From Mobula birostris (lineage: Eukaryota): a DNA stretch of 64,000 bases. The DNA lies in the NCBI RefSeq assembly GCF_030028105.1, contig NC_092384.1:42911553-42975552 (forward strand), in the 5' to 3' direction. Below, one piece after another: positions 2,311 to 29,400 of the stretch. Made by a program: the position numbers and the translations under genes. Under the pieces are notes generated by a model that saw only the letters and a list, made by a program, of their open reading frames with translations, did no database searches and had not been told where the DNA came from. Each line of letters opens with the position of its first letter. The stretch's first letter is position 1.

Positions 2311-2424
2311 AATAAATTTAATTTAAAATAATAATTTAAAATCAATGTACCCCAAAGTTAGCATTTTCAGTTGAATTTGTATCAGTTGCAAATTAAATTA
2401 AACACTTCCATTGGGATGTGTAAA

Positions 2425-2488: not shown

Positions 2489-5400
2489 GTAAGGTTTATG
2501 TAGCATAAGGTTCCCCTGGAGACTTGTGGCCCCAATCCAATACAAACATTTTGTATTTCTTAGCCATGAAGCTGATAGGAATTACATTTTTTTCTGTAGA
2601 ATTTTACAAACCAACTATTCTTTTTTAACCAATTAATGATTTGTTGTCAATCAAAAAACTATAGATGCTGGTAATCTGAAAAAAGACACAAAATGATGGA
2701 AACTCAGGTAGCATCTGTGAGGAGAAAAAGAATAGACATTTGTCAAGGCTGATAAACTGACATGTTTTAAAACTTATTTCATTTTGCACTTTCATCTTTT
2801 TAATATAGCTACATTGGATTTGGAAGTCAGCCCAACAGTGTTGGATGCCACAATTGGTGAAGGAGTCCTATTAAGTTGCTTATTTTCTCACACCAGTAAA
2901 CTTGACTTGAGCTACATTGTGATCGAGTGGAATCAGAGAACAGGAGATAATGAGAAGGCTATTTGCCTGTTTGAGTTTGGAGAATATGAAATCTATAGAC
3001 CTGGATCAAGTCTCTCTTTAAGCGAAATAAGCAAAGGAAATGCATCATTACTCCTAAAAAATGTTACTATTAATGACATTGGATCATACTCCTGTACAGT
3101 TACAATATTTTCTCATAAAAAAGTGGGGAGAGTTACTTTGTCGATTTCAGGTGAGTACAGAGATAATACCTGAAATCTGTCAAAACTGTGTTAGCTGAAA
3201 ACTGGAAATGTTAATGATGATAAAAATTACCACACGTGTTTGGTGACTAACATTAGAAAATACACCCACATGCCAAAGAAATTCAGTGTTCATCTGCATA
3301 ATGGTGATGATTTGAAATCCATTGTTAGTTTTAAACATGAGACTGATTATTAAGAGTAGAAAAAGTGTTAAGAATAATTGAAGCAAAACCCAAAGAAGGT
3401 CAATATCCAAAATATAAACAAGTGTCATAAAGTCATAGAAAAGTACATCTAGTCTGTGCCAAACCATTTAAGCTGCCCACTTTCATCAACCTGCGCCGGG
3501 ACCATAACCCTCCATGCCACTACTATCCATGTACCTATGCAAACTTCTCTTAAATGTTGAAATCAAACTTACATGCACCACCTGTGCTGTCCACTCATTC
3601 CACACACTCACAACCCTCTGAGTAAAGAAGTTTCCCCTCATGTTCCTGTTAAACTTTTCACCTTTTACACTTAACTCATGACATCTGGTTATAGTCCCAC
3701 CCAATCTCAGTGGAAAAAGCCTGCTTGCATTTACACTATCTATACCCCTCATAATTTTGTGTACCTCTATCAAATCTCCTCTCAATCTTCTGCATTGCAA
3801 GGCAGAAAGTCCAGACCGATTCAATCATTCCTTGCTGGAGGCATTGAGTAGGTCAGATAATAACAGTGGTAAGAGAAAAAAGAGTGAGCATTTCAGGGCA
3901 ATGTCTCTTCATTAGAAAAATTCTAAGAAGGGTGAGCTGGGCAAAGCTGGACAGATGGCCATTGAACAAACAAGATTTCATTGAACAGCACACATAATCT
4001 GGAAAATGGGAGGAGTGGGGAGGGCATGCAACTTGCTCCATTGCAAAGCACCATGAACATGTTATATTCGAAGTGATACCAAATGAGAAAGCTTATGAAG
4101 GTACTACTAGTACTATTACGTCGACTCAGGCCTAGGGGGCCAGCGTCGGGCACGATGATGGACTCTCCACTTCTCCCTCCCCCACATCAGTGTGTTCAGT
4201 TCATCTACATTAGCCGCGCCGCTGCCTTCTAGGATCGTGTTGACCATATTCTTGGGAGGGCACCCAGGGTTCATCCTACCGTGCTTGGGCTCCCATATGA
4301 TGACTAGCCTGGCAGGTAGCTCGGGGTGGCGTAGACAGTGTCCCCTAGTTGCAGTCTTCTCACCTCGATTTTAGTGGAGAGCACCAGTGGGTTGTTATAG
4401 AGCTCAAAGTTTGTTATGTGCTGTTGCCAATTCACATCAAGAGACATCCGGATCATTCGTGTATAGCAACCATCCAGAGACTTGTGCATCGTCTTGGTGA
4501 GTGTCCACATCTCGTATCCGTACGTGAGAATGGACTCTATGACTGCTATGAAAATCTATGAAAATGCTATGAAGCTAATGCAATATATATCCTGCTTCTT
4601 TTATTATTGTAGCACCTCCTGCAGTCTGGGTAAACACTGTAAGTATTACAATTGAACCTGGTGAAGATAAAGCAATTATTTGTGAGATGCAGAACTTTTA
4701 CCCAAAGAACCACTCTGTCACTTGGTTAAAAAGTGGCTCGAAAGGCAATGGAAACCAGGTCGATATCACATCCCAAGCAGTTTCTGGAACACCTCAGCAA
4801 AATCAAGATGGGACATTTAATCTGATTTCATTCCTAATCATCAAAGGAAACCAGTCAGATGATGGATCTTTTTATATCTGCCAAGTGGATCATGAAGCTT
4901 TAAAATCACCAGTGCAAAAAGCCATTAGTTTGACCATAAAGGGTGAGTTATAATAAATGAGGTTGGTATCATTTCTCTTACGCCCTGTTTATTCTTATTT
5001 AGGGAACCTTGGTTAGAATTTTGTGTAACTGAGCCACAAGAGAAAGGCATCACTGTAAGAAGCAATCATCATCCAGTCTCTTGCCTAATGGTACATCAGT
5101 TCCTTAAAATTAGTCTGACTTGTTAACACTGTTACATTGTTTGCTGTGTTTCATTTAAAATAAGTTTTTTGTCATTTATTTGCAATATGTACACAAAATA
5201 TTTCAATAGAAAAACTGCCAACCTTTGAACTCACCTTATCAGAAATATATACAGCAATAAAATAGTTTTATAGCTGCATTTCACTGACTATTTATACAAT
5301 ATCTGAATCATGCGGTTTCTAAATTATTTTTTGCAGTTTCATTGTCAAATTATGCAAGAAGAGAGTCATTTGACATGAACATCCGACAGTTTTCAAAATT

Positions 5401-8400
5401 ATACTCAGTAAATACTTAATTAAATCAAAAAAATTTTGATCAATTAGTTCTCTGACCTAATGTGAAGGAGCCTCTGAACCAAACTACATGTGGGATATTA
5501 ATGTAACGTGGATATATTCTCCCACAGAGGGATGCATTGCCTTTATTTTTCAAATGAGGTACTATATTAAAGTGTGGTTTGTTTTCCAGGAATACCATGA
5601 CACCATTTTAAAAAAGAGCTCAATGTCTCGATGACATGGTCAATGTTTGTCCTTCCCCAAGATCTTCCACCAGTACCAAAACCCCTTTTCTGCTCATTAT
5701 CATACTCAAAATGCTGGAGCAGCGGTTCCCAAACTTTTTTAGTGCCGTGGGCCGATGCCATTAAGCAGTGGGTCCATGAACACCAGGTTGAGAACCCCTG
5801 TTCTAGAGTAACTCTTCCAGTTGCTCTGGATTTCCAGCATCTGCAGAATCCTTTGTGCTGCTCATTGTCTTTTGCTGTTTGAAGGAGCTTGCTGTGTTGA
5901 AATTGACAGGCTTGCTTCCTGCATCAAAAGATTTCAGTTCGAATGTATTTCATTGGTTGCTAAGTGCTTTGGAATGTTCTGACAATGACACAAAAATATC
6001 ATACAAATGAAATTCTTCATTTCTTTTGGAGAGTTTAGGTGAACGTTGCTAGAACCAGGGCTCGGGGAAACTCAAATTTGCACAGGAATACTGCTGCAAT
6101 CGATACTCATCCACTTGCTCTGCATAAATATGAAATCAATAGAATTCCCAGGCCCCAGAGCTTTATTGCCAAGCCAACATAGCTGAAAAATTATCAACAT
6201 CATACCTTTGGCATCTACGTTGATCAATTATTGGATCAATATTTGATATTGATAATATGATTTAGTTCTGAATCACTTGTATCTTTAAGTTTCCTCCCTA
6301 AGCTTTGTCAATAATGAGACCATAAGACATAGAAGCAGAGTTAGGCCATATGGCCCATTGAGTCTGCTTCACCCTTCAACCATGGCTGATTCTTTTTTCC
6401 CCTCCTCAACGCCATTCCTGCCCTTCTCCCTGTAACCTTTGATGCCATGTCCAGTCAAGAAACTATCAATCTCTGCCTTAAATACACCCAATGCCTGGCC
6501 TCCACAGCTCTATGTGGTAACAAATTCCACAAATCCACCACTCTCTAGCTAAAGAAATTTCTCCACATCTCTATTTTAAACAGACGCACCTCTATCCCAA
6601 GGCTGTGCCCTCTTGTCTAGACTCCCCCACCATGGGAAACATCCTTTCCACATCTACTCTGTCTAGGCCTGTCAACATTTGAAATGTTTCAATGAGGTCC
6701 CCCCCCCCCACCCCACAACTTTCTGAATTCCAGCAAGTACAGACCCAGAGACATCAAACGTTCCTTGTATGATAATCCTTTCAAGTTGGGAATCATCCTT
6801 GTGAACCTCCTCTGAACCCTCTCCAATGCCAGCACATCTTTTCTTAGATGAGGAGCCCAAAGCTGTCCGCAATACTCAAGGTGAGGCCTCACCAGTGCCT
6901 CATAAAACCTCAGCATCACATCCCTGCTCTTGTATTCTAGACCTCTTGAAATGAATGCTAACATTGCATTTACCTTCCTCACCACCGGTTCAACCTGCAA
7001 GTTAATCTTTAGGATGTTCTGCACAAGAGCTCCCAAGTCCCTTTGCATCTCAGATTTTTGGATTTTCTCCCCATTTAGAAAATAGTCTGCACGTTTATTT
7101 CGATTACCAAAGTGCATGACCATGCACTTTCCAACATTGTATTTCATTTGCCATTTTCTTGCCCATTCTCCTAATCTCAGTCCTCATGCAGTTTACCTGT
7201 TTCCTCAACACTACCTGCCCTTCCACCATTCTTTGTATCATTTGCAAACTTGGCAGCAATCCATCTATTCCACCATCTAAATCATTAATATAGAGCATAA
7301 AAAGAAAAGGTCCCAACACCAACCCTTGTGGAACACCACAAGTCACTGGCAGCCAATCAGACAAGGATCCTCTTATTCCTACTCACTGCCTCCTACCAAT
7401 CAGCCAATGCTCTAACCATGTCAGTAACTTTCCTGTAATACCATGGGCCCCTAACTTGATAAGCAGCCTGATGTATGACACCTTGTCAGAGGGTTCTGAG
7501 AGTCCAAATATACAACATCCACTGCATCCCCTTTATCTATCCTACTTGTAATCTCAAAGAAATCCAACAGGTTTGTCAGGCAAGATTTTCCCTGAAGGAA
7601 GCCATGCTGACTTTGTCCTATCTGGTCCTGGGTCACCAACTACACGTAATGCATATGTGCAAGTTTGAAATGTGTTGAATCAGACAATAGAAATGTCAAA
7701 ATAGTCGTGAGTAGATTGCCATTAATCTCCTAGTCAAAATGTGAAGCATTACTTTTGGAAGAGTATAGTTTCCAGCATTAGATACTTTAAGTCTCAGTTT
7801 TTTCAACTATTATTAAACTATATTTGGAATATAGTTTGGATCGACTATATTGATATAACATACATCTCTTTCGAGTCACCCCATAGCACATTTACAGCCA
7901 ATGACATGTTTTCTAAAATACTGCTGTTGTTGCATTGGAAATGGTGTTTTGTACTGCGCTGCAACAAAGTTTAAAATTCTGCTCTGTGATTGCAAGTAGC
8001 AGTCAGCTCAAAGAAACTATAACAAATAATCAATAACAAATGCTTGGCTTTTTGTCTTCATAGGACCCAAATTAACTAGCAGATCAAGAGTATTACTCAC
8101 AATTGTTTTGACATTTCTGATCACAGCAATGTCATCTGTCTGTTTTGGAACTTGCCTTTTCTACAATAAAAGTATAGGTAAGTAATAGAACTCTTAAAAC
8201 TTATTTTTGGGATGAGGTTGCGTTTACCAGGGCAGTATTTACTTACCCTTAATTTTCCCAAGAAGGTGATGATGTCCTATCTCTTCGAGTAATTGGGGTT
8301 TGTGTGATGGTAGTGATGGTGATGTTGCCTCAGTGTGTTTGAATAAAATACTTCAGTGATACTAAGCTTCTGACAGTGATCCTTTCCTTTTGTCCCTGGT

Positions 8401-11400
8401 GCTTTATTGTACTGTAATAATTTTTTCAGTTGCACAATATTTAACTAAGCATAGCTGTCTGACCAGATTTGCATACTCAATGTGTTTTAGTGTTCAGTCC
8501 ATCTATGACCTTGACTGCTTTTGAAAAAAAAGTAACTTCACTGCGATTGTTAAAAGCAGCAAATGCTGGAACTATCCAGCAGGTCAGTCCACATCGGTGG
8601 GAGGAGAAACAGAGCGAACGTTTCACATCCAAGGGTTTTTGACATGAAGCATTGATTCTGTTTCTCTCCCCACGTATGCAGCCTGGCCTCCTGAGTATTC
8701 CCTGCATTTTCTGCTTTCAGTTAAGCTCGCCAGTATCTGCATCTTTTATATATATATATATATATATCTATTTGAACTGAAATTGATCATTGTCCGTCAA
8801 TCAGATTAGTAAAGGAGCATTCCTTAAAAAAATAAAGCAAGAGGATCAGCAAAGTAAATGAGTGAGAAACGGTCTGGAAGGTTAGATCACATGAGATCCA
8901 AGGTGAGATAGCCAATTGGATGAGAATATTGGCAGCATGGTTAATAAGTTAGCATATCTAAGATTGCAGTGAATTCTAGATTAACTGAGCCGGTGTGCGG
9001 ACAAATGACAGATGGGTAAATGTGAAGTCTTCCATTTGGGAAAGACAAGCAAGCGCAGCAAAGTAAATGGTAGGGTCCTAGTGATTGCTGTAGACTGGAG
9101 ACCCGGGGTGCAGGTGCATGGTTCCGTGGAACGGGCAACACACACAGACATATACTTAGGAAGGCATCAGGATATTGAATACAACAATTGAGAACATCAT
9201 GTTACAGTTGTACAAAATGTTAGTTAGGCCACATTTAGAGTACTTCATGCAGACCTGGTTGTCCAACTGTAGGAAGAACATCATTCAGTTGAAAAGGATA
9301 CAAAAAAGATTCAAGAGGATGTTAATAGAACTGGAGGGTTTGAGTTATAATGAGGGGCTGGATAGGCTAGCCTATTGTCCCATGGAGCATTAGAGGCTGA
9401 ATGGTGGCCTGACGGAGAACAATAAAATCAAGAGGTGAAAAGCCACCATCTTTTTTCCAGAATAGGGCAGTTCAAAATGAGAGGACCTAGGCTTAAAGTG
9501 AATGGAAAAAAAAAATAAAAGGGGCCTAAGGGACAATGATTTCCCGCAGAAGATGGTCCTGTATGGATCCTGCTGCCAGAGGTATGTAGAGTGGTGTACA
9601 GCCACAATGGTTAAAAGGCATTTCAGCAGGTACATGGAAAGGAAAGAGTTAGAGGGCTATGAACCTAAGGGACACCTCAGTCTGACATGATCCAGTTGGG
9701 CTGAAGGGCCTGTATTCCATGCTGTATAGTTATATGACTCTGACTCTACAAGTAGCAGAGCCTTTTTTTTAGTAAAGAACAACAAATCGATTATGTTTCT
9801 CTTTGATTTTCAGTTACTCCCAGGGTGACAAATATTGTTAAATCAAACCACTGGAACACCAACGCTCCACTTTCTCTTGCCTGTGCAGTTTACTGGTTCG
9901 GACCAAAACCAATCGTTGTGTCTTGGTACAGGGAGGAGGTGGGTAAATTCCAAAGAGTCCTCATTGGTAAATGGGACAACACTTCACACTGTGCAAAAAG
10001 GAAGTCAAAAGGGTATTTTCAGAATGAACAAGAAGATAAAGCAATGTTGTTCCACAAAGGAGAATGTGATATTGCTGTGACTTGGAAAAGCCACGAAAGT
10101 AGTGGAATGTACAGTTTAATATCTCAACTCACCTTCAGATGTGCAAGAGCTGCGGAAGGAAAGCAGGCGTACAATTTTTCTGTCCAGCATGGCTCACTGA
10201 AGCAAAACATTTTAAGATCCGTTATCGTAGAAATGGAAGGTGAGTTGCTGTTATTTTATTGCAGAATAGGCCAAAATAAAATTTGAAATATTTTAAACTA
10301 AACTAAAATAGACATTGATAAGAAATAGAAACCCTTTGGAACTCTTTGTTCTGTACAATCTATAGCCGCCAGCAGTCTATTCCACACACTCACCATTCTC
10401 TACGTAAAAAAATCTTATCCCTGACATCTCCTCTGTACCTATTCCCCAGCACCTTAATACTATGCCCTCTCATGCTAGCCATTTAAGTCCTGGGAAAAAG
10501 CCTCTGACTATCCACACAATCAATGCCTCTCATCATCTTATACACCCCTATCAGGTCATCTCTCATCCTCCATCACTCCAAGGAGAAAAGGCCGAGTTCA
10601 CTCAACCTATTCTTATAAGGCATGCTCCCCAATCCAGGCAACGTCCTTGTAAATCTCCTCTGTACCCTTTCTATGATTTCCACATCCTTCCTGTAGTGAG
10701 GCGACCAGAATTGAGCAGAGTACTCCAAGTGGGATCTGACCAGGTCCTACATAGCTGCAACATTACCTCCCAGCTCTTAAACTCAATCCCATGATTGATA
10801 AAGGCTAATGCACCGTATGCTGCCTTAACCACAGAGTCAACCTGCGTAGCAGCTTTGAGTGTCCTATGGACTCGGACCCGAAGATCCCTCTGATACTCCA
10901 CACTGCCAAGAGTCTTACCATTAATGCTATATTCTGCCATCATATTTGACCTACCGAAATGAACCACCTCACACTTATCTGGGTTGAACTCCATCTGCCA
11001 CTCCTCAGCCCAGTTTTGCATCCTATCAACGTCCCGCTATAACCTCTGACAGCCCTCCACACTATCCACAACACCCCCAACCTTTGTGTCATCAGCAAAC
11101 TTACTAACCATCCTTCCACTTCCTCATCCAGGTCATTTATAAAAATCACGAAGAGTAAGGGTCCCAGAACAGATCCCTGAGGCACAGCACTGGTCACCGA
11201 CCTCCATGCAGAATATGACCCGTCTACAAACGCTCTTTGCCTTTTGTGGGCAATCCAGTTCTGGATCCACAAAGCAATGTCCCCTTGGATCCCATGTCTC
11301 CTTACTTTCTCAATAACCCTTGAATGGCATATATGTTAAGATTTCATTTTGTAATATTTTCTGGTATATCACATAGTATATGCCACTAGTGGAAAGAGTG

Positions 11401-17400: not shown

Positions 17401-20400
17401 TGAATATACTCAAGGTCAAACTACAAATTCTCATGTTTGTTATATGCAATATTTCTGAGGTTTACTAAATTCCCCTGAGAGAATCACACAGAGATTTTGG
17501 ATTTATTTATCTAACCCTGTGAGGCAGTTGATCAAAGAGCGGCCCTTTTGCTTCAGGGTCAGGTCGTCTTGGAATCAAGTCTTGTTCCAGAGCTGAGCAC
17601 CAAAATCGACCAATACGTTTGAGAGCAGTGCTGAAAGGGTGCTGCTGTGTGAGGAAAAACTGCCATCCGTTCTTTCAGGTGGACCTGATAGGGCGGCACG
17701 GTAGCATAGTGTTTAGCACAACGCTTTACAGTAGCAGCGACTCACATCCAATTCCTGTCGCTGCACGATCTCCCCATGACTACGTGGGTTTCCACAGGGT
17801 GCTCTGGTTTCCTCCCACGGTCCAAAGATGTACTGGTTAGTAGGTTAATTGGTCATTGTAAATTGTCTTGTGATTAGGCTAAGGTTATATTGGGGGTTGC
17901 TGGGCAGTGTGGCTCGGAAGACCCCATTCCGCACTGTGACTCCAAATAAATAAATAAATTATATATTTCATATTATTAAATCAAAGAGAAGTGGGGGAAT
18001 TTCCTTGGATGTACTGGCTAATATTTGGTATGTCCTAATCAGCATAAATAATGCCAGATAATTTGCTTTTAATTATGGGGATTTATTGTGTGCAAATTGG
18101 CTGTGATGTTTCTTCCAGTAATGACATCCATTTTAAGTACTGGCTATTTGCACTATTTGTAACGTGCACCTCAAATCATCAAAACATACTGTGAAATGTG
18201 TCATTTTCATCAGTGCCAACTCAGCCCATGGATTGTGCTGGGGTGATCCCACTAATGTCACCACACTTCTGGTGCCACGATAACATGCCCACAACTCACC
18301 AGCCCTAACCATATATCTTCGCAATGAGGGAGGAGATCGGAGCGCCCAGGTAAGCCCAGACCATCACAGAGCGAACATACAATCTCCTTACAGACAGTGG
18401 CAGGAATCAAACTCTAATCGGTGATCACTGGCGCTGTACAATGATTGTTCTAACCCCTATGCTACCGTGCACCAAGGTTTAAAGTTCAAAGTACACTTAA
18501 TATCAAAGTATGTATACATTATACAACCTTGAGATTTGTCTCCTTTCAGGCTGCCACAAAACAACCCATAAAAAAAGACCATCAAACAGCCGGTGTGCAG
18601 AGAAAAATCGAATCACGCAAACTAATAAGAGTAAACAGAAAGTATTCACAGCGCAAGTGAGTCCACAGACACAGACCCAGAGCATCCGTAGCAGGCGCAG
18701 TTCATCGCAGAGCTGTGTAACCATCGCGGAACAGCCAGCAGAATCGGCCTTACCATCTCCTCTGGTCCCGACACCCTGCCTTTTCAATCTGGCCTGGCGT
18801 TTAACTCATCCAAACATTGCTGCAGCACCCAGACCCTGTCACTTCGATACACTCCAGGCCTGGACCCCGCCACCACATTTTGGCCTGTACCTGACCTTTC
18901 CAAACTGGCCTGGCGCTTAGATCAATTAAACCACAGGTCTTCCCTGGCTCTCGGTTTAGGTGGACAGGCCTTGATTTTTCCTCATTTCCGCTCGCCCTGA
19001 CTTTGCCTCACCTCCGCTTGCTTCGAATCTGCCTCAACCTCACTTCTACTTGCTTCGACACTCGACTCTTCCTCACCTCCACCCACCTCTCTGTTGTTTG
19101 TACTGATCGTTTACCATAAATGTTATGAGAAGGAGTGTTGTCAATAAAGCATTTGGTTGTATTTCCTGATGAAGGGTCTCAGCCCGGAATGCCGACTGTA
19201 CTCTTTTCCATAGGTGCTGCCTGACCTGTTGGGTTCCTCCAGCATTTTGTAGGTGTTGTTTGGATTTCCAGCATCTGCACGCTTTCTCTTGTCTGTAGTT
19301 GTGTTTTTTGTTTTGTTTGCCACCAACAAGTAGTCGCTGGGCCTCACCAGCGACTTCTTAAACTGGAAATTATAGAGTGCTGTATAAGTTACATTTCTTC
19401 AATACTTTTATGTTCTTAAATAACATTCCTCATAGGTGTTGATGACGATATTGAATATTTTCCAACACAAATGAAGCGCAAAGACTGGGCACTGCAGGCT
19501 ATTGAAGAAGGGCGCCGCACTATAGTTAATTACATCAGTCCAAACATCCATCCACTCCTAGATATTTTAAAAGAGAAGAAAATAATCTCTGAGAATGATC
19601 AGAGTGATATAAAAGCTAAGCTAGACATCGATAAAGGCCGGACTCTCCTGGACATAATGAGCCACAGAGGGCAGTGGGCTTGTGTTCAATTTTTCAATGT
19701 CGTACAGAATACTGATGATCTTTATCCTGGCATCAGAAAGTACCTAACATCACTTTTGGAATCCTACACTGAGAAAGATGACAGACCTGCTTTTGATCTC
19801 CTCTGTGAAGGCAGACCAACGAGTTTATTTCAGATCAACAACGAAAAATCCGAAATAATCAATATTCCTGAAGGTAAGTGTGCTTACATATTTAGAATTA
19901 ATGGACATTTCTGTATTTAACAATAATGAATCATGAAAAGCTTGAACCCATCTCTTTGCAAATTCCATAATAATATATCAAAGTACTGTGACACAGATAT
20001 GCTCTGTCACAGTACTTTGATATATAGCTGGTTGAGGTGAGTACTTGAAGGCTTGAAGCCCTCACACATTAAAAAAAGATGAAAATTATTCCTCCATGGG
20101 ACTATTCAGTTAAAAGGCCTCCAAACATAGCCCTCAACCTAAGGACATAATTTCTCTTGAAGTATTCTGTTCTCCATTTTGAATTTAGTTCATCATGTAG
20201 GCAAAGTCATCTAGTCACCATCTACAATCTTCCAGCCACCTCCACGGTCAATGGTACATGTACATTAGGTAGTTTTGTCAAATCCCCGGCTCCAAGCAAA
20301 GCACTTTTACAGTTTTATTCAGTTTAAATAACATTCCTCAGGAATTTCTGGATTGGATTAGCTGGAAGTTGTGTAGTTGTTCAATATAATTTGATAAGAA

Positions 20401-23400
20401 ATGTGTATTTGTGCAAAGTGCTTCTGAATGAATAGGCTCATTGAGTAAAGGACCTCTCTCACATTCCCTTACAATGTCCCAGGTTTATCTGCACATACTT
20501 CACACAGTGAATAATTCATGTGCCATTGTTGCCTCACTTTTATTGAATATAAAGGTGTTTTGTAGAACAATTTTACACCAGATTTTTGCAGAATTTATAC
20601 CTAAAATGTACCCAAGATTGTATTCTAGCAACAATTAGATTTTTATTTTTTCCTTAGTATTCCTGTGAATTTAGGAGAAGTTAATTGTTTTTCAAATAGA
20701 GCTACACCTTAACAATATGTGATACCAAGAATCCAATTTGTGAATTGAGTTTACTGATAGGCTCTGCCTACCATATTTGTGGAAAGGAGTATATTACTGT
20801 TTGAACAATATTGTTGTCTACCTTCACATCATTCTAGAAGTAGTATTTAAACTCTATTGAACATGTTTTGTATTGTCTTACTTATGTGTAATAGAGCTTC
20901 TAGTACTTATATTCCAATGATCTACCTTCTGTATAAGACTTCATTCTTGCAAGGCATCACCTCACAGCAAATGTTATCCCATCATTACAGTTACAATGTT
21001 CATTGTAAATCAACCTCACAGATATGAAAGGTTTGATTTAATTTCAAACATAAGAGATCCTGCAAATACTAAAAATCCAGAGTAACGCACAAAATGCTAG
21101 AGGAACTCAGCAGGTCAGGCATCATCTATGAACAAAAATGAAGAGTCAACATTCAGCCAAAGACCCTTGAAAGGTCCTGGTGCCCTGTTGAAAGGTTTTG
21201 GCCCGAAACATCATCTCTTTATTCCATTGCATAGATGCTGCCTGACTTGCTGAATTCCTCCAGCATTTTTCATGTGTTACTTTAGTTTAATTTTTATGAT
21301 TTGTGTTCTAGTATGTGCCCATTTTATTACTGTATCTTATACATTATGTTTTATTACTCACTTTGGATGTCGCATTCATTCTAATGTTCTGTCTTTTGTA
21401 ATTATAGAAATCCTTAAAGCAACTGATAATCACAAGAGCATATTGAGAGCTCAGATGGAGAGAATAAAACCATACTTTGGATTTGATAACTCTAGTCCAT
21501 TACTGCAGGAGCATTTTACCAGCCTGGTCATTCTCAATGTCCAAGAAAGGAACAAAACTGAACATGAGCTGCTCCAGCACAGAGACTATACAGCCTGCGA
21601 GTATACAGATTTGCAGCAGCTTCTTTCCCCATCTGCACCAGGGAAGCCATCACCACGAATCACACTCGTGCAGGGAGTGGCAGGTATAGGAAAAAGCATT
21701 ATGATGCAGAAGCTTGCCTACAGTTGGGCATGTGGAACAGGTTACACTGGATTTTATATGTTGCTGTATTTCAGTTTCCGGGAGTTAAACACAATCACTG
21801 AGAAAATCAGTCTGACCGAGCTTATTATACGTAGTTATCCTCATTTGACTATATTATGCAAAAAACTCCTGCAATTTCCAGCTGGAATTCTATTTTTGTT
21901 TGATGGATTGGATGAATTCAAATGGCCTCTTGATTTTAGTGTTCATTCACTTGATAACCCATCCGTTTCTGAACGCATTAACCACTTGATTGTAAGCATC
22001 ATCAAGGGAGATCTCCTGCGTGACTCAACTGTTCTTATCACATCCCGCCCAACCTCAATTGATTTAGACCACAAAACCTATTTTAATCGGTGTGCTGAAA
22101 TTTTAGGGTTTTCCAGGAATGAAATTGCAAAATACTTTGAGAAGTGCCTCAAGAATAAAACATTTGCTGATCATGTCTTCCAGACTGTGAAGAACATTGA
22201 CTCCTTGTATGGGCTCTGTTACGTCCCTGCGTTTTGTGACATTTTGTGCTTCTATCTCCGTAAATCATTTCACTCTAAAGGCAAATGGTCCAATCTGTCT
22301 TCATTTCCCAAAACGATCACAGATTTATTCCTTCGTTTCACCAAGTGTTTACTTGTCTGTACCAGTGGTGAGGAAGAAGACCCTGAGTCCTTCTGCATAG
22401 AAGCTGATGAAGACAAGAATGAAATTATTAACTTGGCACAACTTGCATGGGATGGAGTCATCAATAAAACAATAATATTTTCATCTAAAGACGTTGAAAA
22501 AAACATCTCTCAAAAGGCCAGAGTAATAAAATCCTTCTGGAAAAAAATCCTCACTAAAGAGAGCCTACAAATGATGCATTCTCATATTTGGCAATTTTTC
22601 CATCTGACTCATCAAGAGTTTTTTGCAGCACTCTATTGTATTTCTGGTGTGGATCATGTGCACAAGGCCTTCAGCTCAAAGGGCAGCACTTTTGAGATTG
22701 TGCTGAGGTTCACTGCTGGCTTGGTCTCTCGCAGCAACAGAAAACTTGTCCAACAGTTGGTGCCTGAACACCAGGTCAAAGAAAGGGAAGTCTTTGCAGC
22801 TATTGAAAATGCTGCTGCTGTTGACATTCCAAAAGAAGACAAGCTAACTCCTGAAAATATCAAAAAATATACAGCACACAAAAGACAAAAACTAACAGCC
22901 TCTCATTGTCTGTATGAAGCAGCAAATGAAGATCTAACAAAATCAGTTGCTTCCCAAACAAGTGACTGTGTGAATTTTTCTTACATCACTTTGAATGTGA
23001 CTGACTGCACTGTGATTGCAAACCTCCTTTCCCATCACACAACTATTGAAACACTCGAACTGGATGGGTGCAAAGCTGGAGCTGCTGGTTTCCAAAGACT
23101 GAAGTCTATTTTTTCCAGAATCAAAACACTGAGGTAGTGAAATAGAACATAGAAATCTACAGCACATTGCAGGCCCTTCGGCCCACAATGATGTGCCGAC
23201 CACGTAACCAACTCTAGAAACTGCCTAGAATTTCCCTAGCGCATAGCCCTCTATTTTTCTAAGCTCCATGTACCTATCTAAGAAACTATTAAAAGATCCT
23301 ATTGTATCCGCTTCTATCGCCACCGCCGGCAGTGCATTCCACACACCCACAAGTCTCTGTGTGAAAAACTTACCTCTGACATTCCCTTGGTACCTATTTC

Positions 23401-26400
23401 CAAGCACCTTAAAACTATGCCCTCTCATGTTAGCCATTTAAGCCCTGGGAAAAAGCCTCTTGCTATCCACACGATCAATGCCCCTCATCATCTTATACAC
23501 ATCTATCAGGTCACCTCTCATCCTTCGTGGCTCAAAGGAGAAAAGGCCAAGTTCACTCAACCTATTCTCATAAGGTACGCCCTCCAATCCAGGAAGCATC
23601 CTTGTAAATCTCCTCTGCACTCTCCCTATGTTATCTACATCCTTCTCGTAGTGAGGTGACCAGAACTGAACACAGTACTCCAAGTGGGATCTGACTAAGG
23701 TCTTGTATAGCTATAATGTTACTTCTCGGCTCTTGAACTCAATCACACGGTTGATGAATGCCAACACACCATAAGCCTTCTTAACAACAATGTCAGCCTG
23801 CACAGCAGCTTTGAGTGTCCTTTCAACACAGACCCCAAGATCTCTCAGATCCTCCGCACTGCCAAGAGTCTTACCATTAATACTATATTCTGTCTTCAAA
23901 TTTGACCTACCAAAATGAACCACCTCACACTTATCTAGGTTGAAGTCCATTTGTCACTTCTTTGCCCAGTTCTGCATCCTATCGATATTTCATTGTAACC
24001 TCTGACAACCCTCCAGACTATCCACAACACCCCAACCTTTGTGTCATCAACACACTATCTAACCCACCCCTCCACTGCTTCATCCAGGTCATTTATAAAA
24101 ATCACAAAGAAGAGGGATCCCAGAACAGATCCCTGCAGAACACCAACCTCCATGCAGAATACGAACCATCTACAACCACCCTTTGCCTTCTGTGGGCAAG
24201 CCAATTCTGGATCCCAAAAAAAGGTCTCCTTGGATGCCATGCCTCCTTACATTCTGAAGGAGCCTTGCATGGGGAACCTTTATCAAATGCCTTACTGAAA
24301 TCCATATACACTACATCCACTGCTCTACCTTCATCAATGTGCTTTGTTACATCCTTAAAGAATTAAATCAGGCTCGCAAGGCACAACCTGCCCTTGACAA
24401 AGCCATGATGACTATCCCTAATCAGATTATGTCTCTCCAAATGCTCATAAATCCTGCCTCTCAGGATCTTCTTTAACAACTTGCCCACCACTGAAATCAG
24501 ACTGACTGGTCTATAATTTCCTGGATTATCTCTACTCCCTTTCTTGAACAAGGGAAAAACATTTGCTATCCTCCAATCCTTCAGTACTTCTCCCATCCCT
24601 ATTGACGACGCAAAGATCACCTCCAGAGGCTCAGCAATCTCCTCCCTTGCTTCCCACAGTAGCCTGGAGTATACTTCATCCGGTCCCGGTGACTTATCTA
24701 ACTTAATGTTTTTCAAAAGCTCCAGCACATCCTCTTTCTTAATATCTGTATGCTCAAGCGTTTCAGTCATCCCCACAATTGCCAAGGTCTTTTTCCCTGG
24801 TGAATACTGAAGCAAAGTATTCAATAGGTACCTCTGCTACCTCCTTCGACTCCGTGCACATGTTTCCACTATCACTCCTGATTGGTCCTATTCCCACATG
24901 GCTCATCCTCCTGCTCTTCACATACTTGCAGAATGCCTTGGGGTTTTCCTTAATCCTGTTCACCAAGGTCTTTTCATGTACCCTTCTAGCTCTCCTAATT
25001 TCATTCTTAAGCTCCTTCCTAGCAACCTTGGAATTTTCTGGAGCTGTAACAGTACCTAGTTTCTTGAACATTTTGTAAGCTTTTATTTTCTTAACTGGAT
25101 TTTCTACATACATTGTATACCATGGTTCTTTAACTCTACCATCCTTTCCCTGCCTCAATGGAACATACCTATGCAGAACTCCATGCAAATGTTCCCTGAA
25201 CATTTGCCACATTTCTGCCATGCATTTCCCTGAGAACATCTGCTCCCAAGTTCCTGCCTAATAGCATCATATTTCCCCCAACCCAATTAAATATTTCCCC
25301 AAATTGTCTGTTCCTATCCATCTCTAGCGCTATGATGAAGGAGATAAGTTGTGGTCACTACCTCCAAACTGCTCTCCCACTGAGAGATCTGACACCTGAC
25401 CAGGTTCATTTCCCAATGCCAGATCAATTACAGCCTCTCCTCTAGGTGGTTTATCTAGATATTGCATCAGGAAATCTTCCTGAACACACCTTACAAACCA
25501 CCCCATCCAAATCCCTTGCGCCAAGGAGATGCCAATCAATATTAGGAAAGTTAAAATCACCCAGTGAGGTTGGTTGCTCATCCTGATATGCCTAGATGAT
25601 TCCATTTCTCCTATAGACAATTCTTAAATAATGTCAGTGACCCAGCTTCAACCACTCTCTCAGGCTCTGCTTTCCAGGTACTTACCAGTCCTTGGGTGAA
25701 GGCAGTCCCTTCATATCCCCTCCAAAACCTTTCTCCCATACCCTAAATCTTCTATGTCCTAAAAACCCTCATATACCTTATGCCCCTAGTTATAAAAATT
25801 ACCCTATCTACACTCTTCAGAATTTAAATAAAAACTCAACCAAATCTCCTTTTATCCTCTTCTGCTCCAGGAAGATGAATAGTGAGCAAGAAGAAATAAT
25901 TTATGATCTTTAGTTTATGGGAAAATACTAGCAAACATCAATAGCATGATTATAACTCAGTAAATGAATAATTCATTGCTTGAAAAATGCAGATACAAAG
26001 AGAGCAAAAGATTATTATTGCAGCACACACCAAATGCTGGAGGAACTCAGCAGGCCAGGAAGCATTGTGGAAAAGAGTCAATAGTCGACATTTCAGGCCG
26101 AGACCCTTCATCAGGGCAAAAGATAATTATTGCTTTGTTTTTACAGTTTAGAGGGAAACATGCTAGAAGATGAAGGAGCAGAGATTATTGCTGATGCTCT
26201 CAGAAAAGAAACATGTAGAATAGAAACCTTAAGGTAAAACTTCCAATTCTTTACACATTTATGCACAATATTGAGAAGTATTGTTTTATTTGAAGTTGTA
26301 CACTAGTAACATTAAGGTTAAGCAAGAAGTTTCAGAAGTATAAATTCAATTAATGTAGAATGAAAACCAATAGGGTTAAAGTTTCTCAGCTTCATTCTAA

Positions 26401-29400
26401 CAAGGTCACTCGTGCATTGTCTCAAGGCTGTGGCCTCGTAAACATGGATTTAAAATCCTTTACTTTATATATCTTAGAAACCTGAAAAGGCACAATTTAT
26501 TCACTCTGACCAGTTGGCATCCTTTTGTGTTAACCCCATCACCCAGCTCTTGGTTCAGAGCTCCTCTGTGCCTAGGTGATGCAAGACATCCAGACGTTCA
26601 TTGGGACATTTCTTAGATGCTCTCAGCAAACCAGCTTTAACCACTTCCGGTGCATTTCAGGCACTTTACCATCTCTTCCCTTTACCCTCAACCTGCATTA
26701 TCTAGTTTATCTTCTCTGATATGGAGAGAAGTTTTCTGCAGTCTACCTTACCCGTTTCTCATTTAATTATATGCATTTTAGTCACGTCTCCTCTTAACCT
26801 TCTCTGCTCCATGACAGGGATCATCCTGGTGAATCTCCTTTACAATTAATTCTCTAAATCTATCTGGTAATTAATTCTGAGCTATATAACGTATAAATTG
26901 TGTACACATATTGTATGTTACTGTCATGAACTCTTAGGACCAGCGCATGGCATCGGAGGACATCAAGCCTCAGTGCTCCAATGCGCCCAAGCATCAGTGA
27001 TTTGTTTTAACTAAAACTTGTTGAGTAATTGGTTTAATCATTAAGTTTTCCTTGTGCTTTCATGCCACTTATTTTTTTGAATGTGGGTTCCTCGTACATC
27101 CTGTTTTTAGTTTGTTGTGTTTTAATTTTGATATGCACGGGATTTCCGTGCTATATGCATTATTTAGGTTAGTCATGAATAGCGTTCATCACTGAGTCCT
27201 GAAGTTGGAGTAGGAATGAACTAACATTCTGAGTCATTTATTATTCCTCTGTTACATTCTTCAAATAAATCCTCATCATTACTTTCTACCTCTGAGTCTT
27301 GAGTTTACTCTGCGCCTGGCTCGTTTGCCTGAAGAAATCATTACAGCAGGTCTCGGGCATCATGGATCCAGCAGGGTTTGATCAATTGGTAACTCGGTTA
27401 TTGGAATTTTTGCAGGTTGAAGCACAACTCCATAGGGGAGAAAGGAGCAGCACAAATTGCAGAGGCTTTGAAAACAAACAGCAGCCTGAAGGTATTGGGG
27501 TATGTATTGAACCTACTGGATTCAACACTTGACAACCTCTGGATCGTTTGTAAGGAACAACGTTCTATTCAATGTATCAGAACACTTCAAAGCACTTAAC
27601 TTCACTAATGAGCAAAAACCTTAAACTGAAACACAAAGGGAGAGATTATGTAGAATCTTAATCAGAAAGGTGAATTTTACAGTGCAATTTTTAAAGTGGG
27701 AAAGGGTAAGAGAAGTGGAGAAGAAGGAATTCCTGGAGAGGAATTTAAGTACAACACCATAGAAGAATTGAGAGAGCTTTACAAGTAACTTCACTGAGAG
27801 AGCCACTGTACAGAGGCAGAAGTAAGCATTTTGAACAATAGACCGTACATTGGTATAGTATATATTTTGTCATCTAATACGTCAAGTCTGATTTAACTTC
27901 ATATGTTTGCAAGGGAGGGACATGGGGATGATGATAAAAGAAGAGAATTTGTAGTAGGACCAGAAACAAATGCTTCTCAATATTAAATTACAGAAAGTGT
28001 GTTTCTTTCAATACTGATATCAAACAAGCAGTATGACTTAGAAACCAGGAAGGTATATGCTGTCATTATGGATATGGAATAAGTTACTGGGTTTCAAATA
28101 CTGTTGGTTAGGAGCAGTTGTAGATGGGGAATAGAAGGGACCAGTACAGGTTGTTGGAGAGCATCATAATAACAGCGAAAGCCCAAAAGAGAAGCTATTG
28201 CTGCTGATGTTGTGACCATGACTGGTAGAGTGATATCTGAAACCAATAATCTAAGTCCCACCCATCAGAACAATGAAAAGATACTGGACAATGATGTAAC
28301 TAACTGTACTAAAGGCTGTAATTTGGTAGAATAAGATGAAGACAAAATTACCTTTGTTATCAAGCAACACACATAAAAATTGCTGGTGAACGCAGCAGGC
28401 CAGGCAGCATCTATAGGAAGAGGTACATTTGACGTTTTGGGCCAAGACCCTTCGTCAGGACTAACTGAAAGAAGAGATAGTAAGAGATTTGAAAGTGGGA
28501 GGGGGAGGTGGAGATCCGAAATGATAGGAGAAGACAGGAGGGGGAGGGATGGAGCCAAGAGCTGGAAAGTTGATTGGCAAAAGGGATATGAGAGGATCAT
28601 GGGACAGGAGGCCAAGGAGAAAGAAAGGAGGAGGGGGGGAACCCAAAGGATGGGCAAGGAGTATAGTGAGAGGGACAGAGGGAGAAAAAGGAGAGAGAAA
28701 AAGAAATATATATATAATAATAATAAATAAATAACGGATGGGGTACGAAGGGGAGGTGGGGCATTAATGGAAGTCAGAGAAGTCAATGTTCATGCCATCA
28801 GGTTGGAGGCTACCCAGACGGAATATAAGGTGTTGTTCCTCCAACCTGAGTGTGGCTTCATCTTTACAGTAGAGGAGGCCGTGGATAGACATATCAGAAT
28901 GGGAATGGGACGTGGAATTAAAATGTGTGGCCACTGGGAGATCCTGTTTTCTTTGGCGGACAGAGCGTAGGTGTTCCATCTGGGTAGCCTCCAACCTGAT
29001 GGCATGAACATTGACTTCTCTAACTTCCGTTAATGCCCCACTTCCCCTTCGTACCCATCCATCCATTATTTATTTATTTATTGATTTATTCATTCATTCA
29101 TTCATTCATTCATTCACTCTCCTTTTTCTCCCTCTGTCCCTCTCACTATACCCCTTGCCCATCCTCTGGGCTTCTCCCCTCCCCCTTGTCTTTCTCCATA
29201 GGCCTCCTGTCCCATGATCCTCTCATATCCCTTTTGCCTATCACCTGTCCAGCTCTTGGCTCCATCCCTCCCCCTCCTGTCTTCTCCTATCATTTTGGAT
29301 CCCCCCCTCCCCCTCCCACTTTCAAATCTCTTCCTAGCTCTTCCTTCAGTTAGTCCTGACGAAGGGTCTCGGCCCGAAACGTCCACTGTACCTCTTCCTA

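What the first reader, a model, noticed from the sequence alone, without database searches (positions are those of the whole stretch)
9814..10239. Ig C1-like domain on the cytoplasmic side, lacking its second canonical cysteine and carrying a ~30-aa insertion
Seen: the F-strand motif reads YNFSVQH (codon TTT, one change from TGT) instead of YxCxVxH. About 57 residues separate the C-strand Trp from the SGMYSL motif, versus about 27 in the upstream C1. The insert contains a basic KRKSK patch and two extra Cys. Established: the Ig intradomain disulfide does not normally form in the reducing cytosol. Inference: a duplicated C1 exon was repurposed as an intracellular domain (adaptor, autoinhibitory element, or integrated decoy analogous to plant NLR-IDs). 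Its decay pattern independently fits the predicted topology.
Basis: partly seen in the sequence, partly recalled or inferred. Interest (0 to 1): 0.72.

Follow-up and report, generated by a model that had tools for sequence, protein, structure and literature searches.

The report
Cytoplasmic Ig domain in membrane-anchored NLR
This exon encodes a real, expressed antibody-type (C1) fold that lacks its usual disulfide and sits on the cytoplasmic side of a membrane-anchored NOD-like immune receptor found in sharks and rays, an arrangement I could not find described for any vertebrate.

Summary
Exon 9814-10239 (+, phase 1-1) encodes a 141-aa C1-set Ig fold with Phe (TTT) at the F-strand Cys position and about 31 extra residues between strands C and E.

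Spliced RNA contigs from four runs of two ray species join C1 exon, TM exon 8064-8177 and this exon in one transcript, which then runs on more than 2 kb.

The gene reads signal peptide, B7-H6-like V-C1 ectodomain, TM, C1-like, CARD, NACHT, LRR. RefSeq models in 4 other rays and 8 sharks show the same order, and Phe is invariant in all 13 sequences.

The domain shows no BLASTP similarity to the upstream C1. It aligns full-length, insertion included, with the first post-TM domain of B7-H6-like V-C1-TM-(C1)n gene models from sawshark, bichir, lungfish and amphibians. That domain also lacks the F-strand Cys in 13 of 15 models, so the Cys loss and the insertion are old family traits.

The domain is the fastest-evolving globular domain of the gene (52% ray-shark identity) but stays open in every model.

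A homodimer through the A/B/E/D sheet is predicted (0.65, best control 0.01). My inferred role is a cytosolic spacer or dimerisation module; this is untested.

The parts
2809..3150 (+). V-set Ig exon of the ectodomain, phase 1-1. The leader (signal-peptide) exon lies 3.58 kb upstream of the window start, at L003:6421-6495.
   Evidence: Pfam V-set E 6.5e-12. Splice sites read. tblastn with P0033. Leader exon 25/25 identical to the Mobula hypostoma N-terminus.
4613..4942 (+). Canonical C1-set exon of the ectodomain (YICQVDH, both Cys present), phase 1-1.
   Evidence: Pfam C1-set E 1.4e-13. Sequence. Covered by the spliced RNA contigs. V plus C1 best solved relative is human B7-H6, E 1.4e-28.
8064..8177 (+). 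Transmembrane exon ([38 protein letters not shown]), phase 1-1.
   Evidence: In each of four RNA contigs exactly 114 nt lie between the C1 piece and the C1-like piece. Depth in bin 8046-8242 equals contig depth x 114/197 in all four runs. Conserved in 13 species.
9814..10239 (+). The finding: a C1-set-like Ig domain exon (141 codons plus split codons), phase 1-1, lying between the TM exon and the CARD exon.
   Evidence: single copy in the genome; spliced RNA; fold; 13 orthologues.
9882..9884 (+). Codon of the retained B-strand Cys (C23), invariant in 13 species.
9939..10100 (+). Extra segment between strands C and E (residues 42-95). It contains a predicted C' strand (47-54, with invariant K52 and W53), a low-confidence loop (59-74, holding KRKSK) and two further strands (77-80, 84-93).
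   Evidence: AlphaFold secondary structure and pLDDT. Conservation. Aligned with the same segment of the family's first post-TM domains.
10176..10178 (+). TTT codon, Phe121, at the position of the canonical F-strand Cys.
   Evidence: Phe in 13 of 13 elasmobranch sequences.
19436..19873 (+). CARD exon, phase 1-1. It is absent from one annotated isoform each in Narcine and Pristiophorus.
   Evidence: Pfam CARD E 9.7e-11. Boundaries. Best solved relative ICEBERG, E 1.4e-5. CARD-less isoforms P0001 and P0052. The RNA contig piece ends at 10242, which fits the 3-nt prefix GTG shared by the intron start and the CARD exon start.
21408..23133 (+). NACHT / winged-helix / HD2 exon (Walker A GVAGIGKS), entered in phase 1 and left in phase 2.
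   Evidence: Pfam NACHT E 3.6e-32 and NLRC4_HD2 E 5e-9. Best solved relatives NLRP3 at 3e-42 and NOD2 at 1.3e-29. Boundaries.
26147..37965 (+). Series of short LRR exons ending at the stop codon after ...NLRLN. Exact inner boundaries were not all resolved.
   Evidence: tblastn with P0033 and boundary contexts.

Best explanation
Shown: exon 9814-10239 encodes a folded C1-set-type Ig domain that cannot form the canonical disulfide. It lies between the single TM helix and the CARD of a membrane-anchored NLR. The gene reads signal peptide, B7-H6-like V-C1 ectodomain, TM, C1-like, CARD, NLRP3/NLRC3-like NACHT, LRR. It is transcribed and spliced this way in rays, and gene models with the same order exist in sharks and rays. 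Inferred: with a cleavable signal peptide and one TM helix, the C1-like domain is cytosolic. Shown by comparison: the domain is not a copy of the gene's own C1. It belongs to the first post-TM C1-like domain type of a B7-H6-like V-C1-TM-(C1)n family seen in sawshark, bichir, lungfish and amphibian gene models. That domain type carries the long C-to-E insertion, and in 13 of 15 models it has V/I/L at the F-strand Cys position. Inferred: the V-C1-TM-C1-like module was joined to a CARD-NACHT-LRR gene by shuffling of phase-1 exons before sharks and rays split. Proposed mechanism, inferred and about 40% likely: the domain is a rigid, membrane-proximal spacer that pairs with a second copy through its A/B/E/D sheet, as CH3-type C1 domains do. 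Pairing or clustering of the ectodomain would then bring two or more CARD-NACHT modules together at the membrane.
For: Fold and motifs.
Splicing: each of four runs (two species) has one contig carrying the C1 exon, 114 nt and the C1-like exon, and running on 2.2-3.3 kb further. The piece ends at 10242, as expected for a junction to the CARD exon, which starts GTG.
Whole gene in the window plus upstream leader exon.
Orthologues: 4 rays and 8 sharks share the architecture. Phe is invariant, and there are no frame breaks.
Constraint: ray-shark identity is C1-like 52%, against V 71, C1 70, CARD 62 and NACHT 79.
Origin: no BLASTP match to the upstream C1; a full-length match to lungfish post-TM domains; hhalign 97.7%, E 1.7e-12 to the first post-TM domains against 93.5%, E 2.2e-7 to pre-TM C1.
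Topology: in the family, pre-TM domains keep the F-strand Cys in 17 of 17 cases and post-TM domains in only 44 of 80; an array placed before its TM keeps 10 of 10. Two N-glycosylation sequons are invariant in V and none is invariant in the C1-like domain.
Dimer: ipSAE 0.65 against a best control of 0.01, at least 94% of contacts shared between runs, partner pLDDT at least 72, interface on strands A, B, D and E. The tool's calibration: 21 of 30 proteins solved as pairs of one chain reached the mark, and 0 of 23 solved as single chains. Strands B and E are the best conserved.
Against: Topology is inferred and not measured.
Between the two closest species the exon shows 8 non-synonymous and about 3 synonymous differences (omega about 0.7), against 3 and 6 in the upstream C1. 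Two of the 8 and one of the 3 are deduced from the Mobula hypostoma protein, not read from the listed differences. On that short branch neutrality cannot be rejected.
The domain is the least conserved globular domain of the gene.
The dimer prediction may reflect the model's memory of CH3, CL and similar C1 dimers.
Interface residues are not significantly more conserved than the rest (p = 0.10 and 0.23).
The C1-like plus CARD fold failed (pLDDT 40.6), so nothing is known about contacts with CARD.
The junction to the CARD exon was not seen directly. It rests on a 3-nt prefix, the contig length and the RefSeq models.
The window's C1-like exon did not reach E 0.01 in the own-genome scan with the family profile.
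Confidence: 0.6

Rival explanations
1. Passenger linker. The domain came along with V-C1-TM at the fusion and now serves only as a loosely constrained spacer between the membrane and CARD, with no binding or regulatory role of its own.
For: It has the lowest identity of the globular domains (52% ray-shark). Omega is about 0.7 between the two closest species. The KRKSK patch and the extra Cys residues are not conserved. Interface residues are not significantly more conserved than the rest.
Against: The frame is open in every model, with only short in-frame length differences in 12 of the 13 sequences. Thirty-three residues are invariant across 12 species, among them the core Trp, the B and E strands, K52-W53 in the insertion and Y-x-F-x-V-x-H. 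A mere spacer would be expected to shrink or lose the fold.
Confidence: 0.22
2. A duplicate of the gene's own C1 exon was recruited to the cytosol as an adaptor, an autoinhibitory element or an integrated decoy, in the manner of plant NLR-IDs.
For: The position directly before CARD would suit autoinhibition. The cytosolic placement and the lack of a disulfide are confirmed. Isoforms without CARD exist, which hints at regulation around this region.
Against: There is no detectable pairwise similarity to the upstream C1. The domain type, its insertion and its missing Cys are shared with first post-TM domains of non-NLR proteins in other vertebrates, so they predate the fusion. No pathogen target with this domain is known, so a decoy role has no support. 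The C1-like plus CARD fold was uninformative.
Confidence: 0.12
3. The domain is not cytosolic. Either the hydrophobic exon does not span the membrane or the topology differs, so the Ig domain faces the lumen or the outside and the loss of Cys is incidental.
For: Several post-TM domains of the wider family keep both Cys. Basic residues flank the TM on both sides. Topology was not measured.
Against: The exon carries a 24-residue hydrophobic stretch conserved in 13 species, after a signal peptide and a glycosylatable B7-H6-like ectodomain. CARD-NACHT-LRR modules work in the cytosol (established knowledge of NLRs). The F-strand Cys is lost in 36 of 80 post-TM domains and in 0 of 17 pre-TM domains.
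Confidence: 0.04
4. Artefact. The fused gene is a chimeric gene model or a misassembled contig that joins a B7-like gene to a neighbouring NLR.
For: All protein evidence comes from automatic RefSeq models. The contigs laid are assemblies and not single reads.
Against: The same exon-exon joins, with exact splice sites, appear in contigs of four runs from two species. The architecture recurs in 12 independently annotated genomes besides this one. All joins keep phase 1.
Confidence: 0.02

Closest known systems
First post-TM C1-like domain of B7-H6-like V-C1-TM-(C1)n proteins. Most are uncharacterised RefSeq or UniProt models, e.g. Protopterus annectens XP_043938022.1. They come from Erpetoichthys, Xenopus, other frogs, Microcaecilia and Pristiophorus. 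Some are auto-named NCR3LG1.
   Same: The position directly after the TM is the same. Both have the A-strand P-x-V-[ST]-x-I, F-[RKG]-P after the B-strand Cys, a conserved Trp about 15 residues after strand C, a long C-to-E insertion and an F strand x-x-[VILF]-x-V-x-H without Cys.
   Different: In elasmobranchs a single such domain is followed by CARD-NACHT-LRR and not by more C1 domains. The sequence is strongly diverged: 12-22% identity in the alignment, and the own-genome scan with the family profile did not list this exon at E 0.01. I found no paper on this family in five searches, so its own function is unknown.
Human B7-H6 (NCR3LG1), the ligand of NKp30; PDB 3pv6, 4zso, 6yjp
   Same: The V-C1 ectodomain of this gene is most similar to it among solved structures (E 1.4e-28 over both domains). 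Both are type I proteins with one TM helix.
   Different: From my own knowledge, not tested here: human B7-H6 has a short tail with Gag-like sequence and no Ig, CARD or NACHT domain. Binding to an NKp30-like receptor was not tested.
AjNLRC4 of the sea cucumber Apostichopus japonicus (PMC8699970)
   Same: It is a membrane NLR-like receptor with extracellular Ig domains and an intracellular NACHT. It is reported to bind microbes through the Ig part and to oligomerise.
   Different: It has two TM segments, no CARD, no LRR and no Ig domain on the cytosolic side. It is an invertebrate protein with no sign of common origin with this fusion.
Classical C1-set domains that pair through the A/B/E/D sheet (IgG CH3, IgM C-mu-4, CL-CH1; also the TAPBPR C1 and MHC class II alpha-2/beta-2)
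   Same: They are the best fold and profile matches. The predicted homodimer uses strands A, B, D and E.
   Different: Those domains are extracellular or luminal, have seven strands and are disulfide-bonded. This one has Phe at the F-strand Cys position, a predicted extra C' strand plus a loop, and lies after the TM.
NLRP3 / NLRC3 / NOD-type vertebrate NLRs
   Same: CARD, NACHT with Walker A, HD2 and short LRR exons are present. The NACHT is closest to NLRP3 (3e-42) and NOD2 (1.3e-29) among solved chains.
   Different: From my own knowledge: known vertebrate NLRs are soluble or peripherally attached cytosolic proteins. This one has a signal peptide, an Ig ectodomain and a TM helix in the same polypeptide.

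Membership tests
Ig C1-set domain (Pfam PF07654) | Profile match above the curated cut-off | tested here: met
   23.8 bits against a cut-off of 21, E 5.9e-5, but covering strands B-C only (residues 12-41). The family profile matches Ig heavy-chain constant domains at 1e-12.
Ig C1-set domain (Pfam PF07654) | Beta-sandwich fold closest to solved C1 domains | tested here: met
   AlphaFold pLDDT 78, pTM 0.75. Top Foldseek matches are the TAPBPR C1, MHC class II alpha-2/beta-2, CL, TCR C and beta-2-microglobulin, with TM-score by query 0.5-0.59.
Ig C1-set domain (Pfam PF07654) | Intradomain disulfide between the B-strand and F-strand Cys | tested here: not met
   The B-strand Cys (C23) is present. 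The F-strand position is Phe121 in 13 of 13 species.
Ig C1-set domain (Pfam PF07654) | Core Trp in strand C and the F-strand motif Y-x-C-x-V-x-H | tested here: inconclusive
   W37 is invariant. The motif is kept as Y-x-F-x-V-x-H.
Ig C1-set domain (Pfam PF07654) | Seven strands (A B C D E F G) with a short C-D connection and no C'/C'' | tested here: not met
   About 31 extra residues are present. The model predicts an added strand at 47-54, a low-confidence loop at 59-74 and a short strand at 77-80.
B7-H6-like V-C1-TM-(C1)n family, first post-TM domain | Located directly after the TM, with the long C-to-E insertion and no F-strand Cys | tested here: met
   Alignment A2. hhalign 97.7%, E 1.7e-12 over 139 columns. 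13 of 15 family models lack the F-strand Cys in this domain.
B7-H6-like V-C1-TM-(C1)n family, first post-TM domain | Followed by further C1 domains | tested here: not met
   It is followed by CARD-NACHT-LRR.
NLR (NACHT-LRR) receptors | NACHT with a P-loop, helical domain 2 and C-terminal LRRs in the same reading frame | tested here: met
   Pfam NACHT E 3.6e-32, NLRC4_HD2 E 5e-9, GVAGIGKS present, LRR exons found.
NLR (NACHT-LRR) receptors | Cytosolic protein without a signal peptide or TM helix | tested here: not met
   A leader exon and a TM exon spliced into the mRNA are present.
Integrated decoy (plant NLR-ID analogy) | The integrated domain mimics a host protein targeted by a pathogen effector | not testable with these tools
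   No target or effector is known. Only an origin from a non-NLR family is shown.
B7-H6 (NCR3LG1) orthologue | Binds NKp30 | not testable with these tools
   Only ectodomain sequence similarity is shown.

The most novel reading that the evidence does not exclude
Elasmobranchs have a true outside-in NLR. A B7-H6-like ectodomain would sense a cell-surface or microbial ligand. A disulfide-free cytosolic C1 domain, the last remnant of an old, unstudied class of cytoplasmic C1-set arrays, would dimerise and pass ectodomain clustering on to CARD/NACHT assembly at the membrane. C1-set Ig domains would then have a second, intracellular life across vertebrates.
Probability: 0.3. Interest if true: 0.85.

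Novelty: new variant of a known kind. Interest (0 to 1): 0.74.

Why it matters
From my own knowledge, vertebrate NLRs are treated as cytosolic sensors, and C1-set Ig domains as extracellular, disulfide-bonded parts of antigen receptors, MHC molecules and their relatives.

This gene breaks both habits. In the oldest living jawed-vertebrate lineage with adaptive immunity, it places an NK-ligand-like ectodomain, a TM helix, a cytosolic C1 fold and a CARD-NACHT-LRR in one polypeptide.

It also points to a larger set of B7-H6-like gene models in other vertebrates whose C1 arrays follow the TM. Those arrays lose the canonical Cys in a domain-by-domain pattern that recurs between species.

If the topology and the pairing hold, three questions become testable: how an NLR can be driven from outside the cell, how a C1 fold is stabilised without its disulfide, and what cytoplasmic C1 arrays do.

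The gene models already sit in RefSeq under automatic names such as NLRC3-like or NOD1-like. Five literature searches found no description of this architecture. That does not prove none exists.

Tried and rejected
1. Paralogues of the exon in the own genome: none at E 0.001; it is single-copy.
2. DNA of orthologues for a codon-based dN/dS: the look-up of encoding contigs returned no DNA for Mobula hypostoma because the file is too large. Only the differences between the two species in the laid contigs could be classified. They are few, and three of the eleven in the C1-like exon had to be inferred from the protein.
3. AlphaFold of C1-like plus CARD (4-sequence alignment A6): pLDDT 40.6, with the Ig part unfolded. 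It says nothing about contacts between the two domains.
4. Conservation of the predicted dimer interface against the rest of the domain: not significant (p = 0.10 in 5 rays, p = 0.23 in 12 species).
5. A conserved basophilic phosphorylation site in the KRKSK loop: considered from the ray sequences and dropped, because sharks do not keep it.
6. Leader exon inside the window: not found. It lies 3.58 kb upstream.
7. A batoid-only distribution: my first reading. It was wrong. Shark orthologues were hidden inside the 50% cluster and missed by the first word search, and one search found eight of them.
8. Literature: nothing on vertebrate Ig-TM-NLR fusions or on cytoplasmic C1 arrays. PMC4594805 is not held.
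9. The protein atlas gave only generic C1-set clusters.
10. Own-genome scan with the family profile: it found a cluster of typical family exons on another contig (C13, 70.04-70.41 Mb), but these resemble the window's exon only weakly. No recent donor was identified.
Full report
**Observation**

The stretch 9814-10239 is an exon-like open frame on the + strand. It is preceded by ...ttttcag and followed by gtgagt. Read in phase 1 it gives 141 codons with no stop. The sequence shows the landmarks of a C1-set Ig domain:
- LSLAC23AVYWF (strand B)
- IVVSW37YREE (strand C)
- [12 protein letters not shown] (strand E)
- QAYNF121SVQH (strand F)

The codon at the canonical second-Cys position is TTT (10176-10178). 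Fifty-eight residues separate W37 from SGMYSL, against 27 in the upstream C1 exon. The extra segment holds KRKSK and two Cys (C59, C84).

Pfam C1-set matches just above its cut-off: 23.8 against 21 bits, E 5.9e-5, strands B-C only. An AlphaFold model built on a 20-sequence alignment has pLDDT 78 and pTM 0.75. It shows strands A-G plus an added strand at 47-54 and a low-confidence loop at 59-74. Its best Foldseek matches in the PDB are C1 domains of TAPBPR, MHC class II, CL, TCR C and beta-2-microglobulin.

**Context**

The window holds one large + strand gene:
- V exon 2809-3150
- C1 exon 4613-4942
- TM exon 8064-8177
- C1-like exon 9814-10239
- CARD exon 19436-19873
- NACHT exon 21408-23133
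- short LRR exons, to a stop at about 37965

The first five of these exons are all phase 1-1. The NACHT exon is entered in phase 1 and left in phase 2. The leader exon (MAFKLRGKMNCLLIDLMIFYILSLV) lies 3.58 kb upstream of the window.

Among solved structures, the V-C1 ectodomain is most similar to human B7-H6 (E 1.4e-28), then CD276 and TAPBPR. The NACHT is closest to NLRP3 (3e-42) and NOD2 (1.3e-29), and the CARD to ICEBERG (1.4e-5).

**RNA evidence**

Four public runs hold the exon. Their contigs were laid on 4500-10400. Two runs match the window without a difference. The other two differ at 9 and 11 positions in the two exons, and those differences reproduce the Mobula hypostoma protein.

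Each run has a single contig of 3.5-4.6 kb. It carries the C1 exon and the C1-like exon separated by exactly 114 nt of contig, and nothing of the introns. Depth in the bin that contains 8064-8177 equals contig depth x 114/197 in all four runs. A substitution at 8135 is carried by the same contigs. The runs are therefore cDNA, and the TM exon is spliced between the two C1 exons.

The contigs run on 2.2-3.3 kb beyond the C1-like exon. The aligned piece stops at 10242 and not at 10239. That is what a junction to the CARD exon predicts, because the intron and the CARD exon both start with GTG. I did not see that junction directly, because only one call of at most 6 kb was allowed.

**Orthologues**

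An exhaustive HMMER search found one strong cluster, represented by a Narcine bancroftii RefSeq model (58% identity over the whole exon). Word-indexed searches then gave full-length models with the same order of domains in two groups:
- Four rays: Mobula hypostoma, Hemitrygon akajei, Pristis pectinata, Narcine bancroftii.
- Eight sharks: Pristiophorus, Heterodontus, Carcharodon, Heptranchias, Scyliorhinus, Chiloscyllium, Mustelus, Rhincodon.

None came from bony vertebrates or chimaeras in these searches.

Across the 13 sequences:
- The F-strand position is always Phe (Y-x-F-x-V-x-H).
- The B-strand Cys is always kept.
- The insertion is always present, and is 4 residues longer in sharks.
- C59 is found in rays only, C84 in this species only, and the basic patch is not kept in sharks.
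- CARD-less isoforms are annotated in Narcine and Pristiophorus, which fits the symmetric phase of the CARD exon.

**Constraint**

Mean ray-shark identity per domain is V 71, C1 70, TM 43, C1-like 52, CARD 62 and NACHT 79%. The C1-like domain is thus the fastest-evolving globular domain. It still has 33 invariant residues, and in 12 of the 13 sequences only short in-frame length differences. The Mustelus model carries an extra repeated segment (see Minor observations).

Between the two closest species the exon has 8 non-synonymous and about 3 synonymous differences (omega about 0.7). The upstream C1 has 3 and 6 (omega about 0.14). Two of the 8 and one of the 3 are deduced from the protein. Neutrality cannot be rejected on that short branch alone, but an open frame in every model across the ray-shark split excludes neutral decay. 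A proper codon analysis needs the orthologous DNA, which I could not fetch.

**Origin**

The domain gives no BLASTP alignment at all with the gene's own upstream C1. It aligns over 127 residues, insertion included, with post-TM domains of a lungfish protein (E 3e-10).

That protein belongs to a set of mostly uncharacterised models from lungfish, bichir, frogs, a caecilian and a sawshark. Their layout is V-C1-TM followed by several C1 domains. In 13 of the 15 models examined, the first domain after the TM has the long insertion and V, I or L at the F-strand Cys position.

Profile-profile comparison favours this class: 97.7%, E 1.7e-12 over 139 columns. Pre-TM C1 domains score 93.5%, E 2.2e-7 over 88 columns, with the insertion gapped.

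The window's genome has its own cluster of such exons on another contig. They resemble this exon only weakly, and the exon itself did not reach E 0.01 in that scan. The V-C1-TM-C1-like module was therefore most likely inherited as a block and joined to a CARD-NACHT-LRR gene through phase-1 introns, before sharks and rays diverged.

**Topology**

This is inferred, not measured. The arguments for a cytosolic C1-like domain are:
- The protein has a signal peptide, a B7-H6-like ectodomain and a 24-residue hydrophobic exon conserved in 13 species.
- A CARD-NACHT-LRR needs the cytosol (established knowledge of NLRs).
- In the wider family, pre-TM domains keep the B- and F-strand Cys in 18 of 18 and 17 of 17 cases. 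Post-TM domains keep them in 63 of 73 and 44 of 80 cases, in a domain-by-domain pattern that recurs between species. An array placed before its TM (a Carcharodon model) keeps 10 of 10.
- Two N-glycosylation sequons are invariant in V. None is invariant in the C1-like domain.

**Mechanism**

A two-copy prediction supports a symmetric homodimer:
- ipSAE is 0.65, against a best control of 0.01.
- The three runs agree in at least 94% of their contacts.
- Partner pLDDT is at least 72.
- In the tool's calibration, the mark was reached by 21 of 30 proteins solved as pairs of one chain and 0 of 23 solved as single chains.

The interface lies on strands A, B, D and E, the face that CH3-type C1 domains use. 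The tool warns that such a pass may come from memory of solved C1 dimers. Interface residues are only slightly, and not significantly, more conserved than the rest, although strands B and E are the best conserved.

My best guess, at about 40%, is a rigid membrane-proximal spacer that pairs and so couples ectodomain clustering to proximity of the CARD-NACHT modules. The C1-like plus CARD fold was uninformative.

**Comparison and novelty**

The closest relatives by descent are the first post-TM domains of the B7-H6-like family. The closest analogue by architecture is the sea-cucumber membrane protein AjNLRC4. It has extracellular Ig domains and an intracellular NACHT, but two TM segments and no CARD, LRR or cytosolic Ig domain (PMC8699970).

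The whale-shark NLR survey does not mention Ig-bearing NLRs (PMC8455134). Five literature searches found nothing on this architecture or on cytoplasmic C1 arrays. The gene models are public under automatic names.

I rate the finding a new variant of known kinds: a C1-set fold and an NLR, in an unreported combination and location.

**Minor observations**

- The introns are full of reverse-transcriptase fragments, which are highly represented in the RNA runs.
- The Mustelus model carries a repeated N-terminal piece of the domain.
- The Narcine upstream C1 lacks its B-strand Cys.

Noticed in passing
window 19436-19873: The CARD exon is phase 1-1. It is missing from one annotated isoform each in Narcine bancroftii (X4, P0001) and Pristiophorus japonicus (X2, P0052). 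A CARD-less receptor isoform may therefore be a conserved splice variant.
   Followed up: partly
own genome G000:C13:70.04-70.41 Mb (loci L004-L013): A cluster of tandem exons encodes typical first and later post-TM C1 domains of the B7-H6-like family. One example is VPPKITGCSEHQ...ELSIEVQHQALKEP, which lacks both canonical Cys. This ray therefore also keeps the non-NLR family on another chromosome.
   Followed up: partly
proteins P0002-P0027, P0037 (lungfish, bichir, frogs, caecilian, sawshark): Post-TM C1 arrays lose the canonical Cys in a domain-by-domain pattern that recurs between species: domain 1 C-V/I/L, domain 4 C-V/M/I/L, domain 5 C-F, domain 6 V/I-C. Pre-TM domains keep both. I found no paper on these proteins.
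   Followed up: partly
window 5682-7651: This intronic repeat (reverse-transcriptase fragments on the minus strand) is covered at depths of thousands by many diverged contigs in all four RNA runs. It belongs to a highly transcribed or highly repeated retroelement family.
   Followed up: no
window 990-2317 (-), 10674-11335 (-), 12874-16450 (-), 23441-24836 (-), 42947-43901 (+), 53784-54841 (-), 62897-63618 (+): Many LINE-type reverse-transcriptase open frames and fragments fill the introns and the flank of the gene. They were observed only and not analysed.
   Followed up: no
window 56949-60680 (-): Open frames resemble retroelement pol (integrase, RNase H and reverse-transcriptase-like stretches), interrupted and in several frames. 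This is probably a degraded LTR-type element downstream of the gene. It was observed only.
   Followed up: no
P0050 (Mustelus asterias model), region after the TM: The model repeats the first 30 or so residues of the C1-like domain (KVAPKVTDIVKSNHLHMDDPLSLVCAV twice). This is either a partial exon duplication or an annotation artefact.
   Followed up: no
P0030 / P0001 (Narcine bancroftii), upstream C1 domain: The B-strand Cys of the extracellular C1 is Ser in Narcine (VIISVMQNFYP) and Cys in the other four rays compared. This is an exception to the rule that pre-TM domains keep both Cys.
   Followed up: no
window 8064-8177 and orthologues: Basic residues flank the TM on both sides (KLTSRSR before, NK/KR after). 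The positive-inside rule alone therefore does not fix the orientation, which rests on the signal peptide.
   Followed up: partly
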